Positions 919-56,601 of a DNA stretch of 64,000 nucleotides are shown here, piece by piece. Each line of letters begins with the position of its first letter. Positions within the stretch are counted from its first letter, which is position 1. The notes beneath the pieces are model-generated. The model saw only the letters and a list, made by a program, of their open reading frames with translations. It had not been told where the DNA came from and did no database searches. The stretch spans positions 124,001-188,000 of the IMG/VR virus record IMGVR_UViG_3300020578_000006. One strand, 5' to 3'. Both the position numbers and the translations under genes were made by a program.

Positions 919-1521
919 ATGAATAAATTTACCGCTATCTACGAGTCTGCCATTCAACGCTACACTCGAGGTGGTTTTTTGACAGGAGATTTGGTAAAAT
1001 TTACAGAAAATGCATTTCGTGATGATTTCTTTAAAAAACAAGCGCCTAACTACATTCAAAAGGCTAAATCATTTAGCGAAAGCGGTTTAAACATAAGAGT
1101 TAGTGCTATAAAAGCAATAAGACCTACTATGCATTCTGGAAACATACAGAATGAAGCGGAATCATTTTTGGTGGATATAGTACAAGAGGTTGCACCTGGT
1201 TTATACAGAGAATTCATAACAGTACCTGCCCACGTTCTACAGCCTATCGATACCGGTATTAATCTAGCCCCAGTTCCAGATAGTCTAAAAAGACCCAATG
1301 ATACTTCTATCACACCTCACCCTGTTAGCTTGAAAGATGAAAACGAACTAATGCTTTCCCCTCACCGTCAAACACAAACAAGTGATATGGGCAACCACAA
1401 GGACTCAGAAGGTGATCGTAAGCTTAATAATGTAAATGTAAAAATACCTAGTTCACCGGCTAAAGGTGAGAACAGCCCAAGTGTAGAGAGCGGCACCCAC
1501 AGGTATCTTCCTAAGCGTTAA
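919..1521 (+). CDS. Hypothetical late protein, putative head-packaged (N-terminus MNKFTAIYE)
   Basis: 200-aa ORF with late promoter and an I-x-E site near the N-terminus. Confidence 0.6.
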   Translation: MNKFTAIYESAIQRYTRGGFLTGDLVKFTENAFRDDFFKKQAPNYIQKAKSFSESGLNIRVSAIKAIRPTMHSGNIQNEAESFLVDIVQEVAPGLYREFITVPAHVLQPIDTGINLAPVPDSLKRPNDTSITPHPVSLKDENELMLSPHRQTQTSDMGNHKDSEGDRKLNNVNVKIPSSPAKGENSPSVESGTHRYLPKR

Positions 1522-2443
1522 TTTCAGTTAACGCCAATACAAGACAATAAAAATTAATTTCTTGATCAACAACAAACGCGGATCTATACATATATTCCCC
1601 AATAGTTATCAACCATAGTTTCTTTTGTTGTTCGGATAATGAATAGTTACCCTCACAAACATTATCAAATAACGACTTCATAAGTAGACTGTAATCCCCG
1701 TGAAACGTCTCCTCATTTTCTATAACATGTTTTCTTGCATTAAATACTTTTTTACTAACAATAAACGTTATTAGTTTTATAATAAAGTCGTCCTTTACAT
1801 CAAGGGACGGTATAGTTAATATCCCTATAGTACTAAATTTTTGCAATTCATTAATACACTTTCGTATATCTGGAAAATATTTTCTAATTAACCCAATTAA
1901 CTTAACTTTATTTTCTTCATCAACTTTAATATTCTCAGCCTTTAGAATAGTATAACAACGCTTTACAACCTCTTGTAAGTTAGGCTCTAAATCTATAAAC
2001 TGGCACCTACTTTGAAGAGGTGCAATAACTTTGTGTTTGTAATTGCACGTTAAAATAAATCTACAGTGGCCGGCATATTCTTCCAATACATTTCTTAAGG
2101 AACGTTGCGCTTCAATTGAAGCCATTCCATCTATTTCATCTAGCAATACTATTTTTTTCTTACCGTTAAAACTCTTAGTTCTACTAAAACTAGTTATATC
2201 ATTTCTTACCGCGTCTATGCCTACTTCAGAGCAATTTTGATAGATGTATTCAGCCTCTAGTGTGTTAATAAGAACTTTTGATGTAGTTGTTTTGCCTATT
2301 CCTTGATGACCGCAGAACATTAAGTTAGGTATTTCATCATTCTTAATAAAAGATGTTAGTATTTTTCTAGTTTCTGAAGACAGTATAACCTCGTCTATAG
2401 TTTTAGGTCTGTATTTTTCAACCCAAAATTTATCTACATCCAT
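1511..2443 (-). CDS. gp44: Clamp loader ATPase subunit gp44 (RFC-like AAA+)
   Basis: WVEKYRP, GHQGIGKT Walker A, LLDEID Walker B, LQSRC; start set at MDVDK (2443), directly after the dUTPase stop. Confidence 0.93.
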   Translation of the reverse strand: MDVDKFWVEKYRPKTIDEVILSSETRKILTSFIKNDEIPNLMFCGHQGIGKTTTSKVLINTLEAEYIYQNCSEVGIDAVRNDITSFSRTKSFNGKKKIVLLDEIDGMASIEAQRSLRNVLEEYAGHCRFILTCNYKHKVIAPLQSRCQFIDLEPNLQEVVKRCYTILKAENIKVDEENKVKLIGLIRKYFPDIRKCINELQKFSTIGILTIPSLDVKDDFIIKLITFIVSKKVFNARKHVIENEETFHGDYSLLMKSLFDNVCEGNYSLSEQQKKLWLITIGEYMYRSAFVVDQEINFYCLVLALTEINA

Positions 2444-2444
2444 T

Positions 2445-2891
2445 TTATTTACCGCTACTTCCGAAGCCTTTTTCACCTCTGTCAGTTTGTTCTACTTGAC
2501 CCCACCCCACAACCATGTGAATATTATAATGAACGATTAATTGTGCAATTCTATCGCCTTTCTTCACTTCATATTGCTCTTGACGATGATTGTAAAGTAA
2601 TACCCCAAGATCTCCTCTGTAATTTTGATCTATGATCCCGGGGTGAGCTAAAATACCACTCTTAAAGCTAAGACCGGATCTAGATCCCACTTGCAACCAG
2701 TAGCCTGGCTCTAGATAGGCAAGTTTTAAACCAACTGGCACGACTGCTTGACCAAGCCCCGGTATAACCGTATTTTCTACCGCTGCTAAATCCCACCCAG
2801 AGTCAGTATCAAAGTTCTTTTTTGGTAATTGGGCATCTGGGTGAGTCTTTTCAAATTTAATAGCAGGTAAATAAGGTGGTAATGACGACAT
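2445..2891 (-). CDS. dut: Trimeric dUTPase
   Basis: SGWDL, GSRSGL, GIIDQNYRG, RIAQLI and RGEKGFGSSG motifs I-V. Confidence 0.96.
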   Translation of the reverse strand: MSSLPPYLPAIKFEKTHPDAQLPKKNFDTDSGWDLAAVENTVIPGLGQAVVPVGLKLAYLEPGYWLQVGSRSGLSFKSGILAHPGIIDQNYRGDLGVLLYNHRQEQYEVKKGDRIAQLIVHYNIHMVVGWGQVEQTDRGEKGFGSSGK

Positions 2892-2897
2892 ACCTAA

Positions 2898-2925
2898 ATT
2901 ATAAGGTATGGTATAATATTTTCAA
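2898..2925 (-). promoter_or_regulatory. Sigma70-type promoter TTGAAA-N16-TATAAT (dut)
   Basis: 6 nt before ATG 2891. Confidence 0.75.
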
Positions 2926-2927
2926 CG

Positions 2928-2935
2928 TATAAATA
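2928..2935 (+). promoter_or_regulatory. Late promoter TATAAATA
   Basis: 4 nt before ATG 2940. Confidence 0.8.
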
Positions 2936-2939
2936 TAGA

Positions 2940-16335: not shown

Positions 16336-17280
16336 ATGACAAGAGTAAAAAGTATCAGCGATATTAGTCAGGTATATGAACAAATGTTAGAATCTAAAAA
16401 GGCTGATCAAACAAATACTCAGGAAGTAGTTGAGGAAAAAGCAGTTAAAAAGCTAGAATCATTTCCAAAAGCTACAGATAAAAAGGTTAACGTGGCAAAG
16501 ATTATGGCCAAGGGGTCTGATAAAAATGCTTTTGCACATAAAGATTCTGGGCCAGAGGCTGTATTAGGTGTTAATAAGAAAATTGTCGATCCAAAGACAG
16601 CAAAAAAGAATAATTACTTTGAACCAGAAAAATTTTCAGATAATACTAGAAAATTAGCTAAAGAGAATATAAATAATCATATGAAGTCAATTTTTGATAA
16701 ACTATATGAAGATGTAATTGGTAGCGACAAGCTCGATATCGGCTTACAAGCCGGTCCAGAAGGTGAAGCTACAGATGCTAAGGACCTCGATCTTAGCGGC
16801 GGTAGTGAAGATACCGTTACAGTAAAGCTTGATAGAGATTTAGCTCAAAAATTACATGATGCTCTTATGGATGTTCTTGGTGGTGAAGAAGAGCACGGTG
16901 ATGAAGATCTTGGTGATGAAGCCGCTCCTCTAGAAGATAAGGAAGAGGCTGAAGAAAAGAAGGAAGATAAGAAAGACGAAGCTGAAGAGGCTGAAGAAAA
17001 GAAGGAAGATAAGAAAGAAGTTGCCGGTGAAGGTACTGATCTTAAAGAAGTCTCCCCTAAGGCTGGTCAGTCTCTAGTAGGCCATGGCACAACACATGCT
17101 GGTAAAGTACCTACTGTTGGTAAGATCCGCGCTTCTGGCGGTAAGGCTAGCGGTGATGTAGCTGGTGTAGTTGATGGTAAGGGCAAAACCTTATCTCCCG
17201 CTGGTGGTCATGGCTTGACAAAGCCTGGTAGCATTAATGTAGGTGCTGCTGGTTACAAAGTTGGCGATTTTTTTAAATAA
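16336..17280 (+). CDS. Acidic, putatively abundant head core/internal protein (long form)
   Basis: Start moved from 16261 to ATG 16336; Glu/Lys-rich centre, Gly-rich C-terminus; followed by a terminator. Confidence 0.65.
   Translation: MTRVKSISDISQVYEQMLESKKADQTNTQEVVEEKAVKKLESFPKATDKKVNVAKIMAKGSDKNAFAHKDSGPEAVLGVNKKIVDPKTAKKNNYFEPEKFSDNTRKLAKENINNHMKSIFDKLYEDVIGSDKLDIGLQAGPEGEATDAKDLDLSGGSEDTVTVKLDRDLAQKLHDALMDVLGGEEEHGDEDLGDEAAPLEDKEEAEEKKEDKKDEAEEAEEKKEDKKEVAGEGTDLKEVSPKAGQSLVGHGTTHAGKVPTVGKIRASGGKASGDVAGVVDGKGKTLSPAGGHGLTKPGSINVGAAGYKVGDFFK
16668..16675 (+). promoter_or_regulatory. Internal late promoter TATAAATA
   Basis: Exact box inside the CDS, 5 nt before in-frame ATG 16681. Confidence 0.7.
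16681..17280 (+). CDS. Nested in-frame short form (199 aa, MKSIFDKLYE...)
   Basis: 16681-16336 = 345 nt (in frame); own late box and L-x-E N-terminus. Confidence 0.5.
   Translation: MKSIFDKLYEDVIGSDKLDIGLQAGPEGEATDAKDLDLSGGSEDTVTVKLDRDLAQKLHDALMDVLGGEEEHGDEDLGDEAAPLEDKEEAEEKKEDKKDEAEEAEEKKEDKKEVAGEGTDLKEVSPKAGQSLVGHGTTHAGKVPTVGKIRASGGKASGDVAGVVDGKGKTLSPAGGHGLTKPGSINVGAAGYKVGDFFK
16942..17018 (+). repeat. 35-nt direct repeat, period 42 nt (EEAEEKKEDKK x2)
   Basis: gaagaggctgaagaaaagaaggaagataagaaaga at 16942 and 16984. Confidence 0.85.
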
Positions 17281-17343: not shown

Positions 17344-17745
17344 GTGAGTCTCTTCGAAAAAGTATTTGTATCGCTTCTCGAAAAAGAATTAATAAATTCG
17401 GCCGCTACCTGGAATACCGGTATTATGCCAATTCATTATACCCCTCCACCCAAACCATTTCGACCTATGAATCCAGATAAACCAAGAGAAAGACATAGAA
17501 AAATTATTAAAGATCCTAAATTTAGAAAAAATGTTCAAACAGTACCTGACATGCACAAGGCAGATCCTACAGCAATAAGTGCGGTTACTAACGCAAGAGG
17601 TCAAAAATTATCTGAAGACGAATTAAAGCAAATATGTAGTAAGTATGGTATTTCTAGGCTTAACTCTAATTCACCTAAAAGCTTAGGTAATACAGGTAAA
17701 GTTTTAAAGTTTAGTCCAGAAATACAAGGATATGTAATTCAATGA
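17344..17745 (+). CDS. Hypothetical late protein (MSLFEKVFVSLLE)
   Basis: ORF with late promoter; ATGA-coupled to gp14. Confidence 0.6.
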   Translation: MSLFEKVFVSLLEKELINSAATWNTGIMPIHYTPPPKPFRPMNPDKPRERHRKIIKDPKFRKNVQTVPDMHKADPTAISAVTNARGQKLSEDELKQICSKYGISRLNSNSPKSLGNTGKVLKFSPEIQGYVIQ

Positions 17746-42595: not shown

Positions 42596-42811
42596 ATGAT
42601 AACATTTAAACAATTTGTAATGAATGAAGAAAATGTAGCCGGGGACGGAGGTGTTTTTGGATCAGCTGCTAGTATGGGACATGGAGGTGATGTCGGCAAT
42701 ACTGATTTTTACGCACCCGGTGCAGCATTTTTGGCCAAACCTCTTTTTAAAGTAAAAGGCAAAAAAAATAAAATACTTGTACAAAGAAGAAATAAGTTTA
42801 AATACTTCTGA
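42596..42811 (+). CDS. Small putative head-packaged protein (MITFKQFVMNE)
   Basis: True start probably ATG 42596 (in frame with track ORF 42392); capsid-targeting-like N-terminus. Confidence 0.55.
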   Translation: MITFKQFVMNEENVAGDGGVFGSAASMGHGGDVGNTDFYAPGAAFLAKPLFKVKGKKNKILVQRRNKFKYF

Positions 42812-43797: not shown

Positions 43798-44154
43798 ATG
43801 AAGTTTTTAGCTAAGCTAGCAGAAGAATATAATAAACTAGAAGTTGAAAAGCCTCAATGGGTGGAAGAATATGTTACACCCACAACACCATCTTCAACAG
43901 TTGCAACCACACCCTCTACATCAATAACAGGTACTAAGCCAGGTAGTAATCTAGGTAAAGCCATACAAGACACTCTTGATGTTCAAATTGACCCGGAATT
44001 GGCTAAGAAAAAAGAAGAATTAGATAATGTTTATAAGCAAGTAGCGGATGCCCTTAAGAAAAAGGCAATGGACGCAACAAATAAGCTTAAACAAACATCG
44101 AGTGAATTAGCCGCTACCCCAACGACAGCAGTGCCGTCGGTTCCAGCGGTATGA
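43798..44154 (+). CDS. Hypothetical late protein (MKFLAKLAE), Thr/Pro-rich
   Basis: ORF with late promoter. Confidence 0.6.
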   Translation: MKFLAKLAEEYNKLEVEKPQWVEEYVTPTTPSSTVATTPSTSITGTKPGSNLGKAIQDTLDVQIDPELAKKKEELDNVYKQVADALKKKAMDATNKLKQTSSELAATPTTAVPSVPAV

Positions 44155-44495
44155 AATTTAATAAATTACTAGAAACAAAATATAGAGAGCTTTTCGAGCA
44201 AGTACCTCCTCAAGATTTAAACATACCTGCTCCGGAAGCTCCTGTAGCTGCACCGGCGCCGGCTGCTGCTGTTCCTCCAGCTGAACCGCCTCAGCAGAAG
44301 CCATTAACACCTGAAGGCGAAGTATTTTTAATTAATCTTATCCGTAAAGCCTTGTTTATGAACCCTGATGATCTAGGATTAAAGACAATTAAGGAGTTAC
44401 CAGAAGTAAATGCAAAAAACGCGTCTGAGATTTTAGATAAGATTGTCAAGTTAATGCAAGTAGAAGCTATTGATTTGGATGTAAATACGAAATAA
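44151..44495 (+). CDS. Hypothetical late protein (MKFNKLLE), Pro/Ala-rich
   Basis: ATGA-coupled ORF. Confidence 0.6.
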   Translation: MKFNKLLETKYRELFEQVPPQDLNIPAPEAPVAAPAPAAAVPPAEPPQQKPLTPEGEVFLINLIRKALFMNPDDLGLKTIKELPEVNAKNASEILDKIVKLMQVEAIDLDVNTK

Positions 44496-44562: not shown

Positions 44563-45447
44563 ATGAATAGGGACATTAAGTTATTGTTTGAGGCTTATAA
44601 TAGTATTAAAGAGGCAGAAGATACTAACATAGACACCTTTCATAAAGAATTGGCCAAACAATGGGCTAGTTTATTCTTAGATAAATTACATGAGTATCCT
44701 ATTACCAGTAGATCGGCACACTTAGAAAGATTGCTTGATGGTTCATTAGAAGTTTTTAAGAAGTATATTCTAGATGATATTAAATCTAAAAAACTATCTT
44801 ATTTAAAGGCAGACGCTTTTTCAAAAAGCGAAGATGCTCAAAGCATTGTAAAAAAATTCACAGTAGTAAGTGGAGGTGTAGATAACACCAGTGATGTAGG
44901 TTTTGATTTGAGTGAAGTGGACCACGAGCAAGCCCAGAGCTTGCAAGATGTAGTAGACAGAACAATTGAAGACATGGAGAATGATGAAGATTTTGCAGAT
45001 ACTTTTCCTCAAGAATACAGAGAATTTAAGAACAATATGTTTATTATGTCCACCGATAGTGGTGATTTTGTGGCTGTACTTCCAGGGCATTTAGACGAGA
45101 AGCAAGTATTTGCAAAATTGGCATCAGCTTTCAGTGAAGATAAAAAAGGCCTATCAGATCAAGAATATCACCAAGCCCGTAAATTTGGGCTTGAAAGCGC
45201 AGGAGAAGTGGTCGGTAAAGGCCCTATAAAGATTCAGCTGACTAAAGACCAGACTTTATTATGCACAAGAGATGGACGGGAGCAAGAAGTAAAGTTCGTT
45301 AAAGGTGTTATATTTAATTGTGATGAATGGGTAGGGGATTATTATCATTGTGAATCAAAGAAATATGGTGGTGTTGCCGTATTTCCTCCAGACATTAAGC
45401 TATTAAGCGCCCCAGAGGGCACAATTACTCATCTAACTCCAGAGTAA
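44563..45447 (+). CDS. Hypothetical acidic late protein (MNRDIKLLFE)
   Basis: 294-aa ORF with late promoter. Confidence 0.6.
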   Translation: MNRDIKLLFEAYNSIKEAEDTNIDTFHKELAKQWASLFLDKLHEYPITSRSAHLERLLDGSLEVFKKYILDDIKSKKLSYLKADAFSKSEDAQSIVKKFTVVSGGVDNTSDVGFDLSEVDHEQAQSLQDVVDRTIEDMENDEDFADTFPQEYREFKNNMFIMSTDSGDFVAVLPGHLDEKQVFAKLASAFSEDKKGLSDQEYHQARKFGLESAGEVVGKGPIKIQLTKDQTLLCTRDGREQEVKFVKGVIFNCDEWVGDYYHCESKKYGGVAVFPPDIKLLSAPEGTITHLTPE

Positions 45448-45495: not shown

Positions 45496-46665
45496 GTGGC
45501 TTACATATCCCTAAAAGACCTATATTTTGAAGACGTAGCCGGCATAACTGTGCCTCCGCTGCCTAGACAACAGGTAAATACACCCCCGGTCAAAGTTTTT
45601 GTGCCGGGTGATGAATATGTACCTCAAACACCGTGGACAGAATACGATATATCTCCAGATTTATTTCAAAAAACAGCAGGTGGGGATAAGGAAGGTACTG
45701 GTAGAGGAGAATACAGTATAGCATGTATATTGTATGGGTTCAAGACTAAGGAACAAGTGGATAAAGCATCTGGTAGAATTATACAAGGCGGGGGAGCTTC
45801 TTTTGACGTGGTAGGACCAGATAAACGCAAGTATGAGGTAAAAGAATTAACTAAAGCTGTACGTACAGGAACGGAAGGAACCGGGGTTTTTACAGATATC
45901 CTTAATTCGACAATAGAATTGTTAGATGCTATACTAAAGGAATTTAATACGCTAGACGCCCAGGGTAAGCAGACCATAAACAATATGATTCTAAATAGCA
46001 ATACAGTAAAAAGCACTATTCTTAACAGAAAAAGTCAAAAGGGACATTTTGACGCTATTAAAGACAGGTGGAGCTTAGATGAATATTTAAATGACATAAA
46101 GCGTAAAGCCCCAAGAGAGCTCTCTAAAGGTATTCTTATTTCTCCTATTTTAAATTTAGGTCAATATAAAGAAGAGCGCCCTTACGTAATTTTTTCCTTA
46201 AAACAATTAGTTGATGTATTAAACGAGATTGCCTCTACACAAGTCGCAACAGGCAATGAAGAAGGTACACCTAATCCAGCTGTAAGGGATATCGCCGATA
46301 CTATCAATAAACATTACAGCGTACAAGGTGATGAGAAAGAAAAAGAATTTTTCAAAAAAGAGGCAGAGAAAATTGATAGGGCATTAATTCAAAAGAGATG
46401 TAAGGAATTTAAAAAATGTACTGATGAATTATCTTTTAGAAAGCAAATAATAGCACTTAATTTGTCAGGAATGCTTAAGCTAATTCAAGATAAAACTCAA
46501 GATATTGTTGAGAATTTATTTCCAAATGATGGGTTATTTGCAGTAAACAGCCAAGGCTTTCAATACATTCCGCATAGTAAGTTAAATACCTATCTTGCTT
46601 TTGATACAATAAGTTCAGGAAGTGTAAAGATCAAGCAAAAAATAGCTAGTAATGAAACCATTTAA
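45496..46665 (+). CDS. Hypothetical late protein with PD-(D/E)xK-like nuclease motif
   Basis: GRGEY...FDVVGPDKRKYEVK pattern. Confidence 0.5.
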   Translation: MAYISLKDLYFEDVAGITVPPLPRQQVNTPPVKVFVPGDEYVPQTPWTEYDISPDLFQKTAGGDKEGTGRGEYSIACILYGFKTKEQVDKASGRIIQGGGASFDVVGPDKRKYEVKELTKAVRTGTEGTGVFTDILNSTIELLDAILKEFNTLDAQGKQTINNMILNSNTVKSTILNRKSQKGHFDAIKDRWSLDEYLNDIKRKAPRELSKGILISPILNLGQYKEERPYVIFSLKQLVDVLNEIASTQVATGNEEGTPNPAVRDIADTINKHYSVQGDEKEKEFFKKEAEKIDRALIQKRCKEFKKCTDELSFRKQIIALNLSGMLKLIQDKTQDIVENLFPNDGLFAVNSQGFQYIPHSKLNTYLAFDTISSGSVKIKQKIASNETI

Positions 46666-47278
46666 ACAATTTCTTACAGAACAAAATGGTAGTAGTATAG
46701 GTTTTTTTCCTGGAGCATTTAAACCGCCTCACAAAGGCCATTTTGATACTGCAAAACAAGCTGCAACAATTAATGATGCAGCAGTAATTTTAGTTTCAAA
46801 AATAGATAGAGATAACATATCAGCCGACGACTCAATGTTTGTCTGGGAGACTTATAAACAGTATCTACCAAAAAACTTGTATGTGTTTTCAGTTCAAGGG
46901 TCCCCTGTTTTAACTATATATCAAATTACAGACATCCTTAACAATGGTGTTTTTACCCCCACACCTAGAGCCCCTACCCCTCTACCTGCGGCAACAGAAA
47001 TAGCAGATTTGTTAAGAAAGTTTAACCCACCTTACAGTGTTAACCTTTATGCAAGTCAAGAAGATACAGAAAGATTTAAATCATTCTATGGACCAAGTAA
47101 AGAGATTTTCCAAGGAAAAAACGTACAAAGTATTGCTATGAAAGATATTTCTCGACTAGCGTCTGCGACAGATGCACGTGCAGCATTGTTAAAAAATAAT
47201 GCAAAGGGGTTTCATTCTTTATTACCAAATATTGCAGATCAAAGTAAAGAGGCTATCTTTAATCGATTAAAAAAATGA
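46652..47278 (+). CDS. HIGH-motif nucleotidyltransferase (NMNAT/PPAT/cytidylyltransferase-like)
   Basis: FPGAFKPPHKGH (HxGH) and C-terminal SATDAR (SSTxxR-like). Confidence 0.82.
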   Translation: MKPFKQFLTEQNGSSIGFFPGAFKPPHKGHFDTAKQAATINDAAVILVSKIDRDNISADDSMFVWETYKQYLPKNLYVFSVQGSPVLTIYQITDILNNGVFTPTPRAPTPLPAATEIADLLRKFNPPYSVNLYASQEDTERFKSFYGPSKEIFQGKNVQSIAMKDISRLASATDARAALLKNNAKGFHSLLPNIADQSKEAIFNRLKK

Positions 47279-48636
47279 AATCTTTTAAACAATTCTTGCT
47301 CAAAGAGCAAATTATAAAAGAAGAGCGTACTTCTTATTTTTCACCACATCTCTCACATTTAGAAGACTTAGCTGTAGAGAACGGTAAAGCAGGATTTAAA
47401 GATTTTCTGACACATGTAAATTTAATTTCTAAAAAGATTCAAGGCTACGAATCAGAGCAAGAAATTAATGCAAAAATAGATGGAAGCCCTGCTATTTTGT
47501 TTGGTATTGATCCAAAAACTAAGACTTTTTTTATATCATTAAAATATGTAGTGGATGAATCTACCGATACAATAAAAGAAAATGCAAAACTCTTTCATAC
47601 ATCAGAAGAGATAGATCAAGCTATGTCGGATAGACCAGATTTTGCATCTAGGCTTAAAAATTTATTAGAGCAGTTAACACCAGCTTATGATAATTCTGGG
47701 TTAATATATCAAGGTGATGTTTTATACGCTAGTCAAGAAGATAAAAAAAGAGTGAAAATAGGTACAGAAGAGTTTATTACTTTTGAACCAAACACTATAA
47801 TGTATGCTATTCCTATGGATGATAAATCAGAACTATTTCATAAAGTATTAAACTCTTCAGTGGGGGTAGTTGTTCATGATAGTTTTAAAGGGGTAGTAGA
47901 TAAAGAATCGGGGATAATAAAACTTGTACCGGCGTCTAAAAACATTGACAGTTTGATTGCTAGTAGTACAAATTCAAAAGCATTCATAAAAGGTAGCAAT
48001 TATCGTACTTTTGCTTTTGATATACCCGATAAATTTTTTGATAATCTTAATACACTTATAGTGGACGCTAGTAAGCATATAAACTCTATTTCTGATGAAT
48101 TTAATAATGAATATGTGTCGCCTGGTAGGGGGGCGCCTTCTAGCCAAATCCTAGATATGTTAAAGCGCTATTTAAATAAGCAACTTGACCTAGAGGACTC
48201 AGGACTGTTTGGGGCAGCAAAGACTAGCGGTAGATTAAACTTTAATGCATTTTACAAGGGGTTTCAACAATATGTTGAGTCGCAGATAACAAAAGGTATA
48301 GAAGGACTTGGACCTAAGGGTCAAGCCCAACGCCAGCAAAGACTTAGTATTGTTCAAAGCTTTTTACAGAACAACGCAGCTAATTTTGAGCATCTATTAA
48401 CAGCTACCTTTGAGATGGTAAAAATTAAGTACCTTATTTTTAATATACTGTCTCAACTAGATACTAAGCTAACACAGCATGCTTTTTACAGACTTCCCGA
48501 TGGCTCGTATGTTAAAACAAAAGATGAAGGCTATGTTTTGTTTGCTGGTAATAATCAAGTAAAGATTGTAGATAGAGTAGATTTTTCTAAGATGAACCGC
48601 TTAGTTGGCGGTAGGCGCAGAACCCTTATTACCTGA
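47275..48636 (+). CDS. Ligase-like covalent nucleotidyltransferase (KxDG; probably DUF6267-type)
   Basis: HLEDL, AKIDGSPA (motif I), YQGD, DEGYVL (motif IV), QVKIVDR (motif V). Confidence 0.62.
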   Translation: MKSFKQFLLKEQIIKEERTSYFSPHLSHLEDLAVENGKAGFKDFLTHVNLISKKIQGYESEQEINAKIDGSPAILFGIDPKTKTFFISLKYVVDESTDTIKENAKLFHTSEEIDQAMSDRPDFASRLKNLLEQLTPAYDNSGLIYQGDVLYASQEDKKRVKIGTEEFITFEPNTIMYAIPMDDKSELFHKVLNSSVGVVVHDSFKGVVDKESGIIKLVPASKNIDSLIASSTNSKAFIKGSNYRTFAFDIPDKFFDNLNTLIVDASKHINSISDEFNNEYVSPGRGAPSSQILDMLKRYLNKQLDLEDSGLFGAAKTSGRLNFNAFYKGFQQYVESQITKGIEGLGPKGQAQRQQRLSIVQSFLQNNAANFEHLLTATFEMVKIKYLIFNILSQLDTKLTQHAFYRLPDGSYVKTKDEGYVLFAGNNQVKIVDRVDFSKMNRLVGGRRRTLIT

Positions 48637-49215
48637 TTCGTTAATAGCATTTAATGCTTCAAGATTAAAAATTGTTTGGCGTAATACAGATTCTAGAACT
48701 TCTTTACCCTCACCGTACAGCATATCTCTTATTTTAGATACTATTTTTAATTCATGTGAATTTTCATCTGCATCAAACTCACCGTCTTTTCTAAATTTGT
48801 TATATTCAAGATAGTTTTTAACACTCTCAATATAGCTTGCAGCTAATGTAATTTTACTGAATACCCAAGGTTCTAAATCTTGATTGTCTTTTAGTAGATT
48901 GTAAAGAGCTTTTGACCCGTTATGAATTTTATATAGTTCGTTCTTTGCCATATCAGCTTCAGATTCACCAGAACCGGTAGAGGGTTCAACAGGGGTAATT
49001 TTTGAAGAATCTTCACAATTTTCACTATTTTTACACTGTAAACAATCTTCACCATCTTCACACCCACAAGATTTTTTATTAAGCTTTATTACTGTTGATG
49101 TGTTATTGGAAGGTACCATATTCGTGGTTTCGGCCGCGGGGCCCAGGTTTAATTCATTAACTACAATCTGGGTATAAGCTTCGGAAATTTTTTCTAATTC
49201 ACCTTTTCTGCTCAT
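48601..49215 (-). CDS. Hypothetical late protein (MSRKGELEKISE) with Cys cluster
   Basis: ORF with late promoter; EADMAKNEL...PWVFSKIT helical segment. Confidence 0.6.
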   Translation of the reverse strand: MSRKGELEKISEAYTQIVVNELNLGPAAETTNMVPSNNTSTVIKLNKKSCGCEDGEDCLQCKNSENCEDSSKITPVEPSTGSGESEADMAKNELYKIHNGSKALYNLLKDNQDLEPWVFSKITLAASYIESVKNYLEYNKFRKDGEFDADENSHELKIVSKIRDMLYGEGKEVLESVLRQTIFNLEALNAINESGNKGSAPTAN

Positions 49216-49247: not shown

Positions 49248-49664
49248 ATGCGTAGTTACAAAGAATTTTTCTATGAACAAATACTAGGGGCTACGGAAGG
49301 TATTACTATTCAACATGTTGGAAACGTTAGAGCCACTGTAGACACTGGTAACAGCGGTTATAATGTACTTCATGCAGAAATAATTGATGGTGCAAAAGAG
49401 GGACATGTAAAATTTAAAACAGTAAACGACAAAGTGTTAGAATTGCCTGTAAAAGAGTTTATAACGGTATCCGGAAATAATAATACCAACGATAGACCAG
49501 TAGTAGAGTTAGACTGTAGCTTGGGCCAAGAACAATTTAATAAAGTTCCTTTCAGCCTTGCGGACAGAAGTCAGCAAGATACCCCTGTTCTCTTAAGTAA
49601 AGATTTTATAAAATTAAATGGCGGTGTTGTTAATGTTAATATTAACAGCGAAATTAAAAAATAA
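49248..49664 (+). CDS. Retropepsin-like aspartic protease (RimB/'ATP-dependent Zn protease' family-like)
   Basis: ATVDTG catalytic motif, RPVVEL, FSLADRS...PVLL; N-terminus MRSYKEFFYE. Confidence 0.75.
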   Translation: MRSYKEFFYEQILGATEGITIQHVGNVRATVDTGNSGYNVLHAEIIDGAKEGHVKFKTVNDKVLELPVKEFITVSGNNNTNDRPVVELDCSLGQEQFNKVPFSLADRSQQDTPVLLSKDFIKLNGGVVNVNINSEIKK

Positions 49665-50701: not shown

Positions 50702-52027
50702 ATGTTAAACAAATTAATAGAAAATACCTTTAAGAACACACGTTTAAAGCGAGTTAGGGTAAAGTCTGATCCGTCAATACCGCCTGTGTTTGGATATGAA
50801 AATGTAAGCTGTTTTGAAGGTTATGTACTTGAGGAATGTGGTGAAGGTATGGTGAACGTTTATATTATAAATGCTCCACCAGCAGCAGATCCTATCCAGC
50901 AAGTAAGTGTAGCGCAATTAGAGCCGGTTGAAACAATATCTGCTACTCCTCAAATTTCAGATATAAAAACAGCACTTTTAAGAGCCTTAATCAAAGCAGG
51001 TCATGGAGAAGAGACCCCTGTCTATAATCAGATTAGAAATACTAGTAGTATAGATTTTATAAAAGCTTTTTTAGCCCAAGCCAATATTAGTATAGAGGAT
51101 TTAATGGCAATTAATAATGAAAGCACTCTTCTGCCTTCTCCTTCAGCTGATGAAGATGTAAAAATTAAAAATAAAGCAGAAGATATATTTGGAACCCGCG
51201 AAGGTAAATTTGATAGGTTATTAAAGGCTACGGGTAAAGGTTTAAATCTTTTAACTAAAACAGTAGGTGCAGGTGCAGAGCTGGTCCTAGGAAAGGATAA
51301 TATAGTTGCAAGAGTTAACAGGTTTTTAAAATCTTTTGAAATAGGTGATCTTGTTGATATTAAAAAAGTAACCGATAGGGCTAGAACAAAGGACTATTCA
51401 CATTTACCTTACAATAATGAACCTGTTGTAATAACAGGCTTACCAAAGTTATCTTATCAGAAATATAATGAGGTTAAATACCAATTAATGGGTAGAATAA
51501 AAAATGTAAAGCTTTCCACCGACGGTATAATGTATGTTGTTGGGGATATACAACCAGAGTTAAATAAGATAAAAAAAATATTGTTAGATTTTACCTATCT
51601 TGATAACCCTTCTAAGGTAGGCAAAATTATTTTTGAAGATGTTGAGGGGGCAAGATTTTACAATAGGGGTACTATTGTATATTCTAATAGTGTGTGGTTG
51701 GTCAAGTTAGGTTCTCTAAACATTAACGATAAAACATCGGAGAATAAGAAAGATAATGCTTTCATAGCGGCCTCAATAAATCTTCTTAAAGAATCTTTAG
51801 GCACTAATTATGACGATTTGGCTAGAAGACCAGATTACAGTCTTATAGTAATTGAGGTTGCTATAGAGCTTAAGAAGCATAACCCGGAGACTATGGCGCA
51901 AATTGGAAAGTTTTTTAAGGAATATCTCCCCAAACAAGAAGAATATTTTAAATTATCAACAGATGAAAAGATAAATAGTATTAGAGGTTATTTAAAAAAG
52001 TTTAAGGAAACAACAAATGCCATCTAA
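50702..52027 (+). CDS. Hypothetical late protein (MLNKLIE)
   Basis: 441-aa ORF. Confidence 0.6.
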   Translation: MLNKLIENTFKNTRLKRVRVKSDPSIPPVFGYENVSCFEGYVLEECGEGMVNVYIINAPPAADPIQQVSVAQLEPVETISATPQISDIKTALLRALIKAGHGEETPVYNQIRNTSSIDFIKAFLAQANISIEDLMAINNESTLLPSPSADEDVKIKNKAEDIFGTREGKFDRLLKATGKGLNLLTKTVGAGAELVLGKDNIVARVNRFLKSFEIGDLVDIKKVTDRARTKDYSHLPYNNEPVVITGLPKLSYQKYNEVKYQLMGRIKNVKLSTDGIMYVVGDIQPELNKIKKILLDFTYLDNPSKVGKIIFEDVEGARFYNRGTIVYSNSVWLVKLGSLNINDKTSENKKDNAFIAASINLLKESLGTNYDDLARRPDYSLIVIEVAIELKKHNPETMAQIGKFFKEYLPKQEEYFKLSTDEKINSIRGYLKKFKETTNAI

Positions 52028-53715: not shown

Positions 53716-53721
53716 CTGTAT

Positions 53722-53729: not shown

Positions 53730-53740
53730 CAAAATCTACA

Positions 53741-53768: not shown

Positions 53769-53774
53769 AATACT

Positions 53775-54756: not shown

Positions 54757-54764
54757 AATAAATA
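54757..54764 (+). promoter_or_regulatory. Late promoter AATAAATA
   Basis: 4 nt before GTG 54769. Confidence 0.62.
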
Positions 54765-54768
54765 ATTG

Positions 54769-55638
54769 GTGATTCTTAATAAGTTTGATAAGAAAGCAAA
54801 CGAAATTTTACAAATTTTACAAGAGAACCCTGCGGCCGCAGCGGTTGCTATACCCGCATTAACTAAAGTGGCCCCGTGGGTAGCAGGTCTTTTTTCTGTA
54901 TTAGTAGGAACCCTGGTCGGTGTGGGGGGTGGTGCTTGGGCGCCTCCATTACCGACTCCAACAGAAACAGATGTAAAACCTGAAATAGATAAAAATAAGC
55001 CTAAAACATATCCACCCTTAGTTCCTCCAATACCTTCAACTAATGCACCAGATGTAGTTGGTGGTAGTACCCCTGGGGTTTCTCCAGCACCAGATGTAGT
55101 CGGGGGTACGCCTGAAATTTCTGCACCGGCGCCAGCAGGTGTAAAAACACCTGATGCAGCACAACCAGTACCAGTAGATCAAGCAGTGCCAGTAGATCAA
55201 GCAGTTCCTGTTGATCGATCAATTACTAATACTGCACAAAATGTTGGTGCTAAAGAAAAAGAAATTGCTGTAGCCAAAGATGCTGTACAAGATAAAACGG
55301 CTGGTCAAGCACCTATCGTAGCCCCACCACCACAATTAAAATTTTCTAAAACAGGCAATTTTAAATTAGAACGTCCAGAAGAAGGGTTTCCTAACTACCA
55401 ATCACTAACACCTTATGCTATGGGACAATCCTATACTGACAACTCTAATCTATCACCTAATAGTGTGTGGAAGCAAGTTATGAAAGGTAAGCAGCCCATA
55501 GAAGAGCTTCCCGCTGATATGCAGTCCCCTGAAGAAGTGGCCCAAAGATTTAAGAAGTGGAAAGCAGATCAAAAGAAAAGAAAATACGAGGCCCCTGGTG
55601 CTTTTGGTGGTTTAGTCGGGGAACCCAATCTAGATTAA
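54769..55638 (+). CDS. Pro-rich late protein with N-terminal hydrophobic segment
   Basis: VAPWVAGLFSVLVGTLVGVGGG segment; APDVVGG and VPVDQA repeats. Confidence 0.6.
   Translation: MILNKFDKKANEILQILQENPAAAAVAIPALTKVAPWVAGLFSVLVGTLVGVGGGAWAPPLPTPTETDVKPEIDKNKPKTYPPLVPPIPSTNAPDVVGGSTPGVSPAPDVVGGTPEISAPAPAGVKTPDAAQPVPVDQAVPVDQAVPVDRSITNTAQNVGAKEKEIAVAKDAVQDKTAGQAPIVAPPPQLKFSKTGNFKLERPEEGFPNYQSLTPYAMGQSYTDNSNLSPNSVWKQVMKGKQPIEELPADMQSPEEVAQRFKKWKADQKKRKYEAPGAFGGLVGEPNLD
55171..55205 (+). repeat. Tandem 18-nt repeat (PVDQAV)
   Basis: ccagtagatcaagcagt at 55171 and 55189, followed by a degenerate third copy. Confidence 0.8.
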
Positions 55639-55658
55639 TTACAATTATATTATAAAAT
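55631..55658 (+). promoter_or_regulatory. Sigma70-type promoter TAGATT-N16-TAAAAT
   Basis: 5 nt before ATG 55664. Confidence 0.6.
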
Positions 55659-55663
55659 AAGAT

Positions 55664-56359
55664 ATGCGTATAGCTTTTAGCGGAGCCGCTTGTACAGGTA
55701 AAACAACAACAATTAGCGCCTTTTTAGCCAAATGGCCAAATTACAAGTCTCCAGAAACTTCATACAGAACATTAATATCAAATAATAAGCATAGTAAGAG
55801 AACAGATAAAAAGATTCAACGTAGTATTTTGCAGTTTATGGTAGATCAACAAAAAGGATATACCTTACATGATAATATTGTTTATGATAGGTGTGGGCTT
55901 GATAACGTAGTATATTCGCTATGGTGCCATGATAAGGGTATAAAAGGGTTTAACAAGCAATATATAGATGAATCAATAGAACTTGTAAAAGAGAGTATGA
56001 GAACCTTGGATATTATATTTCTATCAACCAGAGATTTAATGGGACCTATAGTCAATAATAATATAAGAGAAGTTGACCCAGAGTTTGTTATGGAAACTGA
56101 TAATATTTTTAGGGCTATTTACAGTCAGCTTCTATCAACAGGTGCTTCACCCTTCTTTCCTCCTCACGATAGCCCGGGGCTAATTGAACTTAAAGGGACA
56201 ACAGAAGAAAGAATAGATCTTATTAGTATGTATATTACCCCAGAAGGTAGTATGTATGGTGAAGAACAAAGCCTAGTAAATATGGATGAAATCGCCAAAA
56301 TGGAAAGCCTTCTAAGAGAACAAAAAGGGTTAGCTGCTAAAGAAAAAGGTATTTTGTAA
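55664..56359 (+). CDS. P-loop nucleotide kinase (dNMP/thymidylate kinase or NadR-type AAA_28)
   Basis: IAFSGAACTGKTT, IVYDRCGLD. Confidence 0.75.
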   Translation: MRIAFSGAACTGKTTTISAFLAKWPNYKSPETSYRTLISNNKHSKRTDKKIQRSILQFMVDQQKGYTLHDNIVYDRCGLDNVVYSLWCHDKGIKGFNKQYIDESIELVKESMRTLDIIFLSTRDLMGPIVNNNIREVDPEFVMETDNIFRAIYSQLLSTGASPFFPPHDSPGLIELKGTTEERIDLISMYITPEGSMYGEEQSLVNMDEIAKMESLLREQKGLAAKEKGIL

Positions 56360-56365
56360 TAAATA
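56358..56365 (+). promoter_or_regulatory. Late promoter AATAAATA
   Basis: 5 nt before ATG 56371. Confidence 0.62.
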
Positions 56366-56370
56366 TCTTA

Positions 56371-56601
56371 ATGTTATTTGATAAAAATTACAATTTTATA
56401 ATGGAAAGTTTTAAGTCAATTAAAACCATTCATAGACTGTTTTATCCAAGAAACTTTAATCTATCTGAAGAATTTATAAATTCTTTTCGAAAAGAATATG
56501 CAAGGTTAAAGTCAATGAATATTGATGATAGAAGAATTTTACAGAAAATGATTAAGGCGCTACCCTTTCATAAGGATAACGTAAATATTAATACTCTATA
56601 A
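56371..56601 (+). CDS. Small hypothetical late protein (MLFDKNYNFIME)
   Basis: 76-aa ORF with late promoter. Confidence 0.55.
   Translation: MLFDKNYNFIMESFKSIKTIHRLFYPRNFNLSEEFINSFRKEYARLKSMNIDDRRILQKMIKALPFHKDNVNINTL

What the first reader, a model, noticed from the sequence alone, without database searches (positions are those of the whole stretch)
919..56601. About 19 putative late proteins share a T4 capsid-targeting / gp21-cleavage-like N-terminus: a large injected cargo
T4 internal proteins begin with a capsid-targeting peptide (IPIII MKTYQEFIAE) that the prohead protease gp21 removes after (I/L)-x-E. Here, ORFs start MNKFTAIYE (919), MTRVKSISDISQVYE (16336), MKSIFDKLYE (16681), MSLFEKVFVSLLE (17344), MKKRPSVLNE (20100), MSLFANHFNSILE (20140), MDLDSKLIFE (29363), MITFKQFVMNE (42596), MKFLAKLAE (43798), MKFNKLLE (44151), MNRDIKLLFE (44563), MAYISLKDLYFE (45496), MKPFKQFLTE (46652), MKSFKQFLLKE (47275), MSRKGELEKISE (49215), MRSYKEFFYE (49248), MLNKLIE (50702), MILNKFDKKANEILQILQE (54769) and MLFDKNYNFIME (56371). 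Almost all have a late box or are coupled to a gene that does, and most are unannotated. They could form a large head-packaged toolkit delivered with the DNA, including enzymes (see separate findings).
Basis: partly seen in the sequence, partly recalled or inferred. Interest (0 to 1): 0.75.

Follow-up and report, generated by a model that had tools for sequence, protein, structure and literature searches.

The report
Head-targeting leader peptides on late proteins
A distant, uncultured lake-water relative of phage T4 puts short T4-like "address and cut here" peptides on the front of many unrelated late proteins, including likely enzymes, which suggests but does not prove that it loads an unusually large protein cargo into its head.

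Summary
All 19 N-termini are in the sequence as described: 15 have an ATAAATA late box, 3 are coupled to a late gene and 1 (42596) has neither. The hydrophobic-x-Glu motif is loose. It occurs in about 29% of non-late proteins here, and in T4 only about 15% of such matches are known gp21 substrates. It is still enriched: 17 of 22 late-box genes in the window against 17 of 59 others (p=1e-4), and the enrichment recurs in five related genomes.

Inside the loose motif are real leader families:
- Class A, M-x-x-[FY]-[KR]-[QE]-F-phi-x-E, matches T4 IPI and IPIII at the residues T4 mutagenesis showed matter.
- Class B, M-N-K-D-S-x-L-I-F-E-A-Y, has no T4 counterpart.
- A looser class C also exists.

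These leaders are strictly N-terminal, conserved at the protein level and attached to dozens of unrelated bodies. One was swapped between orthologs. The genome encodes a gp21-type protease with catalytic His and Ser, and its scaffold is the protein richest in [IL]-x-E.

Leader-bearing proteins include an RNA-ligase-like enzyme (DUF6267), a HIGH-type nucleotidyltransferase, a PF05618 protease-like protein and a probable PD-(D/E)XK nuclease.

Packaging, cleavage and injection remain inferred. Entries 54769 and 43798 are weak, and 42596 resembles early-region T4 gp61.1.

The parts
919..1521 (+). 200-aa late protein, leader MNKFTAIYE|S
   Evidence: Late box. Orthologs in 5/5 relatives (44-74% id) keep F-x-x-L-[YL]-E|[SAT]. 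No PHROG or Pfam hit.
16336..17280 (+). 314-aa late protein with acidic C-terminal part, leader MTRVKSISDISQVYE|Q; scaffold/core-like
   Evidence: Late box. 5/5 orthologs keep L/V-Y-(x)-E at residues 13-16. Not the gp13 homolog, which is at C1:101466.
16681..17280 (+). Nested in-frame late gene (199 aa) inside 16336, leader MKSIFDKLYE|DVIG
   Evidence: In all six phages an (A/T)ATAAATA box 5-6 nt before a conserved in-frame ATG, followed by SIFDKL[YF]EDVM.
17344..17745 (+). 133-aa basic (pI 10.1) late protein, GTG start, class C leader MSLFEKVFVSLLE|K
   Evidence: Late box. G005 ortholog keeps the pattern; the G001 relative starts MTFKDYF and has no Glu. pI.
19720..20100 (-). 126-aa late protein, GTG start, leader MKKRPSVLNE|D
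   Evidence: Late box. 4/4 orthologs (29-33% id) keep phi-x-E|[DE] at residues 8-9.
20140..20553 (+). 137-aa late protein, class C leader MSLFANHFNSILE|ADE
   Evidence: Late box. 5/5 orthologs keep F-x3-F-x3-L-E|A.
29363..30241 (+). 292-aa late protein, class B leader MDLDSKLIFE|AY with a second site ILTE|AP
   Evidence: Late box. 5/5 orthologs keep LIFEAY. It belongs to the largest body family among the IMG/VR class B hits.
42596..42811 (+). 71-aa ORF, class A leader MITFKQFVMNE|ENVAGDGG; T4 gp61.1-like N-terminus
   Evidence: The regex hit is at the N-terminus. The first 19 aa match T4 gp61.1 MKTFKEFIKEDMVAGDSG. Weak phrog_1823 hit starting at this Met. No late box.
43798..44154 (+). 118-aa late protein, leader MKFLAKLAE|E
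   Evidence: Late box. Only the close relative G005 has an ortholog (MKFLLQIIE|K). Weakly supported.
44151..44495 (+). 114-aa protein coupled to 43798, leader MKFNKLLE|T
   Evidence: 4-nt overlap with the upstream late gene. Orthologs in G001 and G005 have L-L-E at residues 15-16.
44563..45447 (+). 294-aa acidic late protein, class B leader MNRDIKLLFE|AY
   Evidence: Late box. Class B regex hit at residues 7-12. No ortholog in the five relatives, so it behaves like a cassette.
45496..46665 (+). 389-aa late protein, GTG start, leader MAYISLKDLYFE|DVAG; probable PD-(D/E)XK nuclease-like core with a helical insert
   Evidence: Late box. 7 database homologs keep Y3 S5 L6 K7 L9 Y10, and 6 of the 7 keep the Glu. 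Invariant E72, D104, E114-V-K116. Atlas leads and VIA Z 4.7-5.7 point to restriction or homing endonucleases. Foldseek found nothing.
46652..47278 (+). 208-aa HIGH-motif nucleotidyltransferase-like protein, class A leader MKPFKQFLTE|Q
   Evidence: Weak Pfam CTP_transf_like and PHROG cytidylyltransferase hits. 3/3 orthologs keep the leader. An IMG/VR homolog starts MKTFKQFFTE. Overlaps the end of late gene 45496.
47275..48636 (+). 453-aa DUF6267 protein, RNA-ligase-like, class A leader MKSFKQFLLKE|Q
   Evidence: Pfam DUF6267 at 1.6e-48. Invariant K67-x-D69-G70. AF2 pLDDT 87.5 with the leader as a low-confidence helix 4-10 plus linker. VIA Z 8.6-6: 26 of the top 27 rows are RNA or DNA ligases. 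61 of 68 homologs start M-x-x-[FY]-x-x-[FY].
48601..49215 (-). 204-aa acidic late protein, class B-like leader MSRKGELEKISE|AY with a second site VNE|L
   Evidence: Late box. 5/5 orthologs keep L-x-x-E|[AI]Y or a later phi-x-E.
49248..49664 (+). 138-aa PF05618 (Zn_protease/retropepsin-like) protein, class A leader MRSYKEFFYE|Q
   Evidence: Late box. Pfam 6.3e-8. 5/5 orthologs start M-x-x-F-[KR]-x-[FY], for example MKTFKQYIQE.
50702..52027 (+). 441-aa late protein, leader MLNKLIE|N
   Evidence: Late box. 5/5 orthologs keep phi-phi-x-E at residues 7-9; only the first ~130 aa are shared with the four distant relatives.
54769..55638 (+). 289-aa late ORF, GTG (or TTG 54766) start, MILNKFDKKANEILQILQE|N; doubtful member
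   Evidence: Late box. No orthologs. A hydrophobic Ala/Val/Gly-rich stretch follows the N-terminus. No family hit.
56371..56601 (+). 76-aa basic (pI 10.3) late protein, leader MLFDKNYNFIME|S
   Evidence: Late box. 3/3 orthologs keep phi-x-E|[GS][FY] at residues 12-13. pI.

Best explanation
The window belongs to a 229.7-kb uncultured freshwater T4-like phage. The phage builds its head the T4 way, with a gp23-type capsid protein, a gp20-type portal, a scaffold and a gp21-type serine protease. Many of its late genes carry a 7-20-residue N-terminal leader that ends in hydrophobic-x-Glu. The most likely reading is that these leaders are prohead-targeting propeptides, as in T4. An amphipathic N-terminal helix docks the protein to the scaffolding core while the prohead assembles. 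The prohead protease then cuts after the Glu, in some families probably at a second phi-x-E about 10 residues further on. The mature protein stays inside the head with the DNA and may be ejected into the host. At least three interchangeable leader types exist: class A equals the T4 IPI/IPIII type, class B is M-N-K-D-S-x-L-I-F-E-A-Y, and class C is M-S-L-F-x3-F-x3-L-E. Shown here: the sequence motifs, their late-promoter context, their strict N-terminal position, their modularity and conservation, and the presence of the protease and of a cleavage-motif-rich scaffold. Inferred: docking, cleavage, residence in the head and ejection.
For: (1) T4-type head machinery. Peptidase_S77 at C1:100315-100989 (E=5.5e-36) is 33% identical to T4 gp21, with His85 (GELNHP) and Ser140 (SSR) conserved and its own N-terminus MPLRLLVE|TP like T4 MNEPQLLIE|T. 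Gp23 MCP and portal are present. The scaffold C1:99242 is the protein richest in [IL]-x-E in the genome, 12 against 3.0 expected, p=6.6e-5.
(2) Class A leaders (MKPFKQFLTE, MKSFKQFLLKE, MRSYKEFFYE, MITFKQFVMNE, and MVSYRQFIKE at C1:15636) match T4 IPIII MKTYQEFIAE and IPI MKTFKEF. The match covers residues 4 and 7 (targeting) and 8 and 10 (processing), the positions identified by mutagenesis (PMC9026906).
(3) Positional specificity. The class A regex gives 8 hits in the six-frame translation of the whole genome, 5 of them at residues 4-10 of an ORF. The class B regex gives 6 hits, all at residues 7-12 of an ORF.
(4) Modularity. The leader-bearing bodies show no BLAST similarity to each other. 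In IMG/VR, 116 of 124 matches to the class B coding pattern have a start codon 2-4 codons upstream, 94 have a TAAATA box, and the 90 unique bodies form 26 unrelated clusters. 60 of 119 matches to an FKQF-phi-x-E pattern have a start codon exactly 3 codons upstream (about 5% expected by chance), and their 50 unique bodies form 38 clusters.
(5) Leader swap. The small basic protein C1:20488 (83% identical body) has a class C leader here and MKTFKEFYLE in G001.
(6) Protein-level selection. The leaders differ at synonymous sites. The motif is retained in diverged orthologs even where the N-termini are at most 36% identical: 26/32 for late genes against 23/45 for non-late genes, p=0.008.
(7) Specificity among late genes. 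Late genes with T4 homologs outside the head interior (portal, tail tube, gp25-like, gp13, gp4) lack the motif, in this genome and, for the tail-tube and gp25-like genes checked, in their orthologs.
(8) The AF2 model of the DUF6267 protein shows the leader as a separate low-confidence helix joined by a disordered linker.
Against: There is no virion proteome, no N-terminal sequence and no isolate, so cleavage and packaging are untested. The loose motif is a poor predictor in T4: 65 of 257 T4 proteins have [IL]-x-E at residues 6-20 and only about 10 of them are known gp21 substrates. T4 gp61.1, in an early replication-gene region and not known to be packaged, starts MKTFKEFIKE, so a CTS-like N-terminus is not proof of packaging. 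Most candidates are acidic or neutral, unlike the basic T4 IPs. The residue after the Glu is often Q, D, E, N or K rather than the small residues seen in T4. The T4 gp23 cleavage site is not conserved in the MCP alignment; only a nearby conserved LLE|NQE..WC..E|[AG] is present. One homolog of 45496 has Gly in place of the Glu. Enzymes such as an RNA-ligase-like protein and a nucleotidyltransferase could equally act in the cytoplasm.
Confidence: 0.55

Rival explanations
1. The leaders are conserved N-terminal helices with another shared role, such as binding a common chaperone, assembly factor or membrane, or regulating the attached enzyme. They are neither cleaved by the prohead protease nor used for packaging.
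For: T4 gp61.1 carries a class A-like N-terminus in an early gene region. Several bodies look like cytoplasmic enzymes. 61 of 68 DUF6267 homologs keep the N-terminal segment, as if it were part of the protein.
Against: The same leaders sit on dozens of unrelated bodies and are exchanged between orthologs. Class A matches the experimentally defined T4 CTS at all four key residues. The terminal Glu with a hydrophobic residue two positions before it fits the gp21 cleavage logo. The protease and scaffold carry the same motif.
Confidence: 0.2
2. Most of the 19 are chance matches to a very loose motif, helped by the general composition of N-termini. Only the handful of class A proteins are true T4-type internal proteins.
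For: Background rates are high: 29-33% of non-late proteins and 26% of internal windows match. False positives include the gp32-, clamp-loader- and sheath-homologs and PhoH. The predictive value in T4 is about 15%.
Against: Enrichment in late-box genes has p=1e-4 in the window and is repeated in related genomes. The motif is retained in 79-81% of diverged orthologs of late genes. Class B and C leaders are also position-specific and modular. The PhoH match, by contrast, is lost in all 5 orthologs.
Confidence: 0.15
3. The N-terminal similarity reflects nucleotide-level constraints on translation start of leaderless late mRNAs (an A/T-rich 'downstream box') rather than a protein signal.
For: The late box ends 4-6 nt before the ATG in 40 of 52 genes and there is no Shine-Dalgarno sequence, so the first codons could matter for initiation.
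Against: The leaders vary at synonymous positions while the amino acids are kept. Late genes with the same promoter geometry, such as the tube, portal and gp25-like genes, lack the motif. Class A leaders also occur in IMG/VR contigs without this promoter geometry.
Confidence: 0.05

Closest known systems
T4 internal proteins IPI, IPII, IPIII and Alt with their capsid-targeting sequence (Mullaney & Black 1996, as reviewed in PMC9026906, PMC3012670 and PMC5694885)
   Same: A 10-19-residue N-terminal propeptide ending in [IL]-x-E. It has an aromatic residue at position 4 and Phe at 7. It sits on otherwise unrelated late proteins in a phage with a gp21-type protease. The class A leaders here are near-copies (MKPFKQFLTE against T4 IPI MKTFKEF and IPIII MKTYQEFIAE).
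   Different: There are many more candidate carriers, about 25-30 in the genome against about 5 in T4. At least two further leader types (class B and class C) have no T4 counterpart. Most bodies are acidic or neutral and several look like enzymes, not small basic DNA-binding proteins. Many are conserved across the clade rather than hypervariable. No experimental evidence exists.
T4 prohead core and shell proteins processed by gp21 (gp21, gp22, gp24, gp67, gp68; the inh N-terminus is similar)
   Same: N-termini of the type M-x(3-7)-phi-phi-x-E: T4 MNEPQLLIE, MLKEQLIAE, MAKINELLRE, MEGLIE and MIDKDYIAE. Here the protease starts MPLRLLVE and the scaffold is rich in [IL]-x-E.
   Different: Apart from the protease and MCP, none of the leader-bearing proteins is a detectable homolog of these T4 proteins.
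Inner-body and ejection proteins of phiKZ-like giant phages (phiKZ, 201phi2-1, SPN3US), processed by gp175/gp245 (PMC5694885, PMC9026906)
   Same: A large set of head-internal proteins, including enzymes, loaded through N-terminal propeptides. A gp21-related protease removes the propeptides after Glu. Redundant cleavage sites occur within propeptides.
   Different: Those phages use S/A/G-x-E motifs, and most of their N-terminal propeptides exceed 100 residues. Here the leaders are short and T4-like, and the residue two before the Glu is hydrophobic.
T4 gp61.1 (54-aa hypothetical protein upstream of the primase gene)
   Same: It shares the first 19 residues with the window ORF at 42596: MKTFKEFIKEDMVAGDSG against MITFKQFVMNEENVAGDGG. 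Both lie next to replication genes.
   Different: It is not known to be packaged, and similarity ends after residue 19.

Membership tests
T4-type CTS-bearing head-internal proteins | N-terminal propeptide with an aromatic residue at 4, Phe at 7 (targeting), an aliphatic residue at 8 and Glu at 10 (processing) | tested here: met
   Met by class A only: 46652, 49248 and C1:15636 exactly; 47275 and 42596 with the Glu at 11. The key residues come from PMC9026906. Class B, class C and the remaining leaders share only phi-x-E.
T4-type CTS-bearing head-internal proteins | The phage encodes a gp21-family (Peptidase_S77) prohead protease with catalytic His and Ser | tested here: met
   C1:100315-100989, E=5.5e-36. 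33% identity to T4 gp21; H85 and S140 align.
T4-type CTS-bearing head-internal proteins | Late expression together with the head genes | tested here: inconclusive
   15 of 19 have an ATAAATA box at the same 4-13 nt spacing as the protease, portal and tail genes, and 3 are coupled to such a gene. This is promoter prediction only. No RNA run holds this phage.
T4-type CTS-bearing head-internal proteins | Unrelated mature domains that share only the leader | tested here: met
   No body-to-body BLAST hits in the genome. The IMG/VR bodies form 26 (class B) and 38 (class A) unrelated clusters. A leader swap occurs between orthologs.
T4-type CTS-bearing head-internal proteins | Physical presence in the capsid, cleavage after the Glu, and ejection with the DNA | not testable with these tools
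   The phage is uncultured and known from lake-water metagenomes. No proteome is available.
T4-type CTS-bearing head-internal proteins | Small, basic, DNA-associated mature protein (IPI-III type) | tested here: not met
   Only a minority are basic (17344, 56371, 46652, C1:15636, C1:20488 with pI 9.3-10.7). Most are acidic or neutral. Alt shows that this feature is not obligatory in T4.
phiKZ-like inner-body/ejection proteins | S/A/G-x-E cleavage motif, with most N-terminal propeptides over 100 residues (PMC5694885) | tested here: not met
   Here the leaders are 7-20 residues long with a hydrophobic residue two before the Glu.
Covalent nucleotidyltransferase (RNA/DNA ligase) superfamily, for 47275 (DUF6267) | Motif I KxDG lysine and the ligase nucleotidyltransferase fold | tested here: met
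   K67, D69 and G70 are invariant in 26 homologs. VIA Z 8.6 to Naegleria RNA ligase, with 26 of the top 27 rows being RNA or DNA ligases. The Foldseek E-values are weak. Activity is untested.
PD-(D/E)XK nucleases, for 45496 | D...(D/E)-x-K catalytic motif on the restriction-endonuclease core fold | tested here: inconclusive
   D104, E114-V-K116 and E72 are invariant in 8 sequences. Atlas leads point to R.HinP1I, Eco47II and SmaI. VIA Z is only 4.7-5.7 to NhoI, HinP1I, HhaI and I-Ssp6803I. Foldseek found nothing.

The most novel reading that the evidence does not exclude
This clade of freshwater T4-like phages runs a much enlarged, modular protein-delivery system. Several interchangeable N-terminal address tags (the T4-type MKTFKxF-phi-x-E, a new MNKDSxLIFEAY type and others) load 20-30 different proteins into the head. 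These include an RNA-ligase-like enzyme, a nucleotidyltransferase, a protease-like protein and a nuclease-like protein. The proteins are released by the prohead protease and co-injected as a ready-made takeover or counter-defence kit. The different tag classes may set the copy number, place or order of loading.
Probability: 0.3. Interest if true: 0.8.

Novelty: new variant of a known kind. Interest (0 to 1): 0.6.

Why it matters
If the leaders work as in T4, three things follow. First, the T4 capsid-targeting sequence is far older and more widespread than the T-even phages: it is recognisable in a phage whose capsid protein is only about 29% identical to T4's. Second, a second portable head-targeting tag (class B) exists that could be tested as a packaging signal. 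Third, phage heads can carry a broad set of enzymes into the cell ahead of gene expression, which bears on how phages pre-empt host defences. It also gives a sequence-only way to predict virion-internal proteins in uncultured T4-like phages. The practical test is simple: leader-reporter fusions with the cognate protease, or viral-fraction metaproteomics.

Tried and rejected
- Megablast and blastn of the window and of the head module against GenBank phages gave no match. tblastn of the MCP found only about 34%-identical cyanophage proteins, so no cultured relative with a virion proteome is available.
- PHROGs and Pfam left most candidates without any family.
- tblastn of a 27-aa class B leader against GenBank phages gave no match.
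- ESM Atlas gave nothing usable for 29363 and 50702.
- Foldseek against PDB for the 45496 model returned only helical-bundle noise.
- 16336 as a gp13-type neck protein was rejected: the gp13 homolog is at C1:101466.
- Paralogy as the source of the shared N-termini was rejected: there is no body similarity.
- Nucleotide-level conservation was rejected because of the synonymous differences.
- The internal FFKEFIEE motif in the 117-aa protein at 32743-33096 is preceded by Leu, not Met, in relatives. I treated it as an internal motif, not a start.
- A search for RNA runs to map transcription starts found no run that holds this phage.
- My first attempt at the T4 calibration failed on ambiguous bases and was repeated.

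Full report
WHAT THE WINDOW IS. The window is bases 124,001-188,000 of a single 229,717-bp IMG/VR virus record. At least 20 lake-water metagenome runs hold it. It is a distant T4-like phage. It has a Gp23-family major capsid protein (C1:97692-99167, E=7.8e-91), a T4-type portal (C1:42652-44466) and a Peptidase_S77 prohead protease (C1:100315-100989, E=5.5e-36). Within the window it has large terminase, tail sheath and tail tube genes. The capsid protein is only about 34% identical to the nearest GenBank phages, which are cyanophages, and 29% identical to T4's. Hundreds of related contigs exist in IMG/VR. I fetched five related genomes or large fragments (G001-G005, MCP 75-92% identical) in full.

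CHECK OF THE OBSERVATION.
- All 19 N-termini are present at the stated coordinates.
- Four start with GTG: 17344, 45496, 54769 and 20100 on the minus strand.
- Two are in-frame internal starts of longer ORFs: 16681 and 42596.
- Fifteen have an ATAAATA box within 22 nt upstream.
- 44151, 46652 and 47275 overlap the end of an upstream late gene.
- 42596 has no box.

IS IT MORE THAN CHANCE? The motif as written (hydrophobic-x-Glu somewhere in residues 6-20) is loose. In my 297-gene set it matches 33% of non-late proteins and 26% of internal control windows. False positives include the gp32, clamp-loader and tail-sheath homologs (motif, homology) and PhoH. As a calibration I ran the same test on T4 itself. 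There, 65 of 257 proteins have [IL]-x-E at residues 6-20, and only about ten are known gp21 substrates.

The motif is nevertheless clearly enriched in genes with a late box:
- Glu at residues 7-14: 24/52 late-box genes against 56/245 others (p=0.001).
- [IL]-x-E: 20/52 against 33/245 (p=8e-5).
- In the window: 17/22 against 17/59 (p=1.2e-4).
- The same direction is seen in all five relatives.

On statistics alone, about 10-11 of the window's late-box matches are in excess of chance.

WHAT IS INSIDE THE LOOSE MOTIF. The N-termini fall into recognisable leader families.

Class A is M-x-x-[FY]-[KR]-[QE]-F-phi-x(1,2)-E:
- MKPFKQFLTE (46652)
- MKSFKQFLLKE (47275)
- MRSYKEFFYE (49248)
- MITFKQFVMNE (42596)
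- MVSYRQFIKE (C1:15636, outside the window)

I fetched the T4 sequences rather than rely on memory. IPII and IPIII start MKTYQEFIAE|A, and IPI starts MKTFKEFTSTTTPVSTITE|A. T4 mutagenesis places targeting at residues 4 and 7 and processing at residues 8 and 10 of this peptide (PMC9026906). Class A keeps all four.

Class B is M-[ND]-x-D-x-x-L-[IL]-F-E-[AN]-[YF]:
- 29363 and 44563 in the window
- C1:215683, C1:8086, C1:17430 and C1:17031, with C1:7470 as a variant
- 48601/49215 is a looser relative (…L-x-x-E|AY)

Class C is M-S-L-F-x3-F-x3-L-E: 17344, 20140 and C1:20488. Class B families often carry a second phi-x-E about ten residues on (ILTE|AP, LLSE|AP, HLNE|MA). This recalls the 19-residue IPI propeptide and the redundant sites in giant-phage propeptides (PMC5694885).

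THE LEADERS ARE POSITION-SPECIFIC, MODULAR AND UNDER PROTEIN-LEVEL SELECTION.
1. Position in this genome. In a six-frame translation of the whole genome the class A regex has 8 hits, 5 of them at residues 4-10 right after a start codon. The class B regex has 6 hits, all at residues 7-12 of an ORF.
2. Unrelated bodies. The bodies behind the leaders show no BLAST similarity to one another.
3. Amino-acid-level conservation. Leaders differ at synonymous positions (GAC/GAT, TTA/TTG/CTT, ATT/ATA/ATC, GAG/GAA, GCA/GCT/GCC), so the amino acids are what is kept.
4. Class B in IMG/VR. Of these, 116 have a start codon 2-4 codons upstream and 94 have a TAAATA box. Some loci carry two or three such genes in tandem. 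The 90 unique bodies form 26 unrelated clusters.
5. Class A in IMG/VR. A scan for F-K-Q-F-phi-x-E with fixed codons gave 119 matches. Sixty have a start codon exactly three codons upstream, against about 5% expected, and most begin MKT, MKS or MKK. The 50 unique bodies form 38 clusters.
6. Leader swap. Orthologs of the small, very basic Cys-rich protein C1:20488 (bodies 48-83% identical) carry a class C leader here and in G003. The G001 ortholog carries MKTFKEFYLE, and those of G002 and G004 carry MKTFETIFLE and MKSFETLFLE. The leader types are therefore exchangeable.
7. Retention in orthologs. Across orthologs whose bodies are only 25-50% identical, the pattern is kept for 919, 16336, 20100, 20140, 29363, 46652, 48601, 49248, 50702 and 56371. 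Among ortholog pairs whose first 15 residues are at most 36% identical, the motif is kept in 26/32 cases for late genes against 23/45 for non-late genes (p=0.008). The PhoH match is lost in all five orthologs, as expected for a chance hit.
8. Database homologs. 61 of 68 homologs of the DUF6267 protein begin M-x-x-[FY]-x-x-[FY], ahead of the conserved domain that starts near residue 24. All 7 homologs of 45496 keep Y3, S5, L6, K7, L9 and Y10, and 6 of the 7 keep the Glu.

LINK TO THE HEAD PROTEASE. The protease is 33% identical to T4 gp21, with the catalytic His (GELNHP) and Ser (SSR) aligned. Its own N-terminus, M[AP]LRL[LI]VE|[TK]P, is conserved in all six phages and mirrors T4 MNEPQLLIE|T. 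The scaffold next to the capsid gene (C1:99242) has 12 [IL]-x-E sites against 3.0 expected. That is the highest density in the genome (p=6.6e-5), as expected for a protein that is chopped up like T4 gp22. The capsid protein does not keep T4's FLTE|A site in the alignment. It does have a conserved LLE|NQE.WC..E|[AG] at residues 52-61. Late genes with T4 homologs outside the head interior (portal, tail tube, gp25-like, gp13-like, gp4-like) lack the motif in this genome. Their tail-tube and gp25-like orthologs lack it too. The motif is therefore not a general property of late genes or of their unusual promoters.

THE NESTED GENE AT 16681. The 16336 protein family has an N-terminal leader, a variable stretch, a strongly conserved segment …ENINNxM(K)SIFDKL[YF]E|DVMG and an acidic C-terminal part. 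The codons for N-I-N-N spell AATATAAATAAT. In all six phages a late box therefore sits 5-6 nt before a conserved in-frame ATG, which is the same spacing as at ordinary late genes. The acidic tail and the two phi-Y-E sites suggest a core or scaffold-like role. This is inference.

WHAT THE CARRIERS ARE. Most have no family assignment. The exceptions are below.
- 47275 (DUF6267). Pfam E=1.6e-48. It has an invariant K-x-D-G. The AF2 model is confident (pLDDT 87.5). In the VIA-align re-ranking, 26 of the 27 best rows are RNA or DNA ligases (Z 8.6-6.5). I read it as an RNA-ligase-like enzyme. One homolog is fused to a cytidylyltransferase-like domain (P0064).
- 46652. This gene, next to 47275, is a HIGH-motif nucleotidyltransferase-like protein.
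- 49248. It matches PF05618 (Zn_protease).
- 45496. It has invariant E72, D104 and E114-V-K116. Atlas leads point to restriction endonucleases. Weak VIA matches (Z 4.7-5.7) point to NhoI, HinP1I, HhaI and I-Ssp6803I across its N- and C-terminal parts, while Foldseek found nothing. I call it a probable PD-(D/E)XK nuclease-like protein; this is not settled.
- C1:15636 and C1:20488. The first is 216 aa with pI 10.4. The second has an 82-aa mature part with net charge +21. They are the best analogs of the basic T4 internal proteins.

WEAK MEMBERS AND CAVEATS.
- 54769 has no orthologs, an ambiguous start and a hydrophobic stretch that looks membrane-spanning.
- 43798 is supported only by a close relative.
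- 42596 has no late box and shares its first 19 residues with T4 gp61.1, a 54-aa protein encoded upstream of the primase gene. A CTS-like N-terminus is therefore not by itself proof of packaging.
- Most candidates are acidic or neutral.
- The residue after the Glu is often polar or charged rather than small.
- No proteomic or transcript data exist for this phage.

VERDICT. The leaders are real, T4-like in one class and new in at least one other. The most economical explanation is T4-style prohead targeting followed by cleavage (confidence about 0.55). 'Injected cargo' is a further inference. Relative to what is known (the T4 CTS and internal proteins, and giant-phage ejection proteins), this is a new variant of a known kind: more carriers, several interchangeable leader types and enzyme-like cargo, in a distant environmental clade.

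Noticed in passing
whole window, e.g. 905-921, 16322-16338, 44549-44565: Genes have no Shine-Dalgarno sequence. The late box ATAAATA ends 4-6 nt before the start codon in 40 of 52 late-box genes. With T4-like late promoter geometry, transcription would start at or next to the ATG, so late mRNAs may be leaderless. Other genes have a TATAAT-like box at a similar distance.
   Followed up: partly
window 16654-16683: A conserved internal late promoter is encoded by the codons for N-I-N-N inside the 16336 ORF. An in-frame ATG follows it in all six related phages. This is a nested late gene.
   Followed up: yes
window 30238-31671 (-) and 52341-54521 (+): A 7-deazaguanine-type gene set is present: QueC (2e-53), a glutamine amidotransferase next to it, a PTPS/QueD-like protein and a radical-SAM/4Fe-4S protein. 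This suggests modified DNA bases.
   Followed up: partly
window 42811-43227 (+): A GIY-YIG-type homing endonuclease-like gene (PHROG hits to homing endonucleases; T4 SegE-like by BLAST) lies directly after the gp61.1-like small ORF.
   Followed up: partly
window 47275-48636 (+) and P0064: DUF6267, a Pfam family of unknown function, looks like an RNA or DNA ligase (KxDG, ligase fold). In one metagenomic homolog it is fused to a cytidylyltransferase-like domain, matching the neighbouring gene 46652.
   Followed up: yes
L376:267-431 (T4 gene 61.1): T4 gp61.1 begins MKTFKEFIKE|DMVAGDSG, a near-perfect capsid-targeting-like sequence, in a gene not known to encode a head protein.
   Followed up: partly
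G000:C1:20488-20772 (outside the window): A small, very basic Cys-rich protein has a mature part with net charge +21. Its orthologs carry different leader classes. In G002 and G004 it lies within the same gene island as the window's 48-51 kb genes.
   Followed up: partly
window 32743-33096 (-): A conserved 117-aa protein carries an internal F-[KR]-E-F-[IV]-x-E motif. It resembles class A but is preceded by Leu in relatives. It could be an internal cleavage site or chance.
   Followed up: no
   Followed up: partly
window 52978-53715 (-): A PhoH-like gene carries a late box. Its N-terminal F-E-E is not kept in any ortholog, which makes it a worked example of a chance match to the loose motif.
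   Followed up: yes
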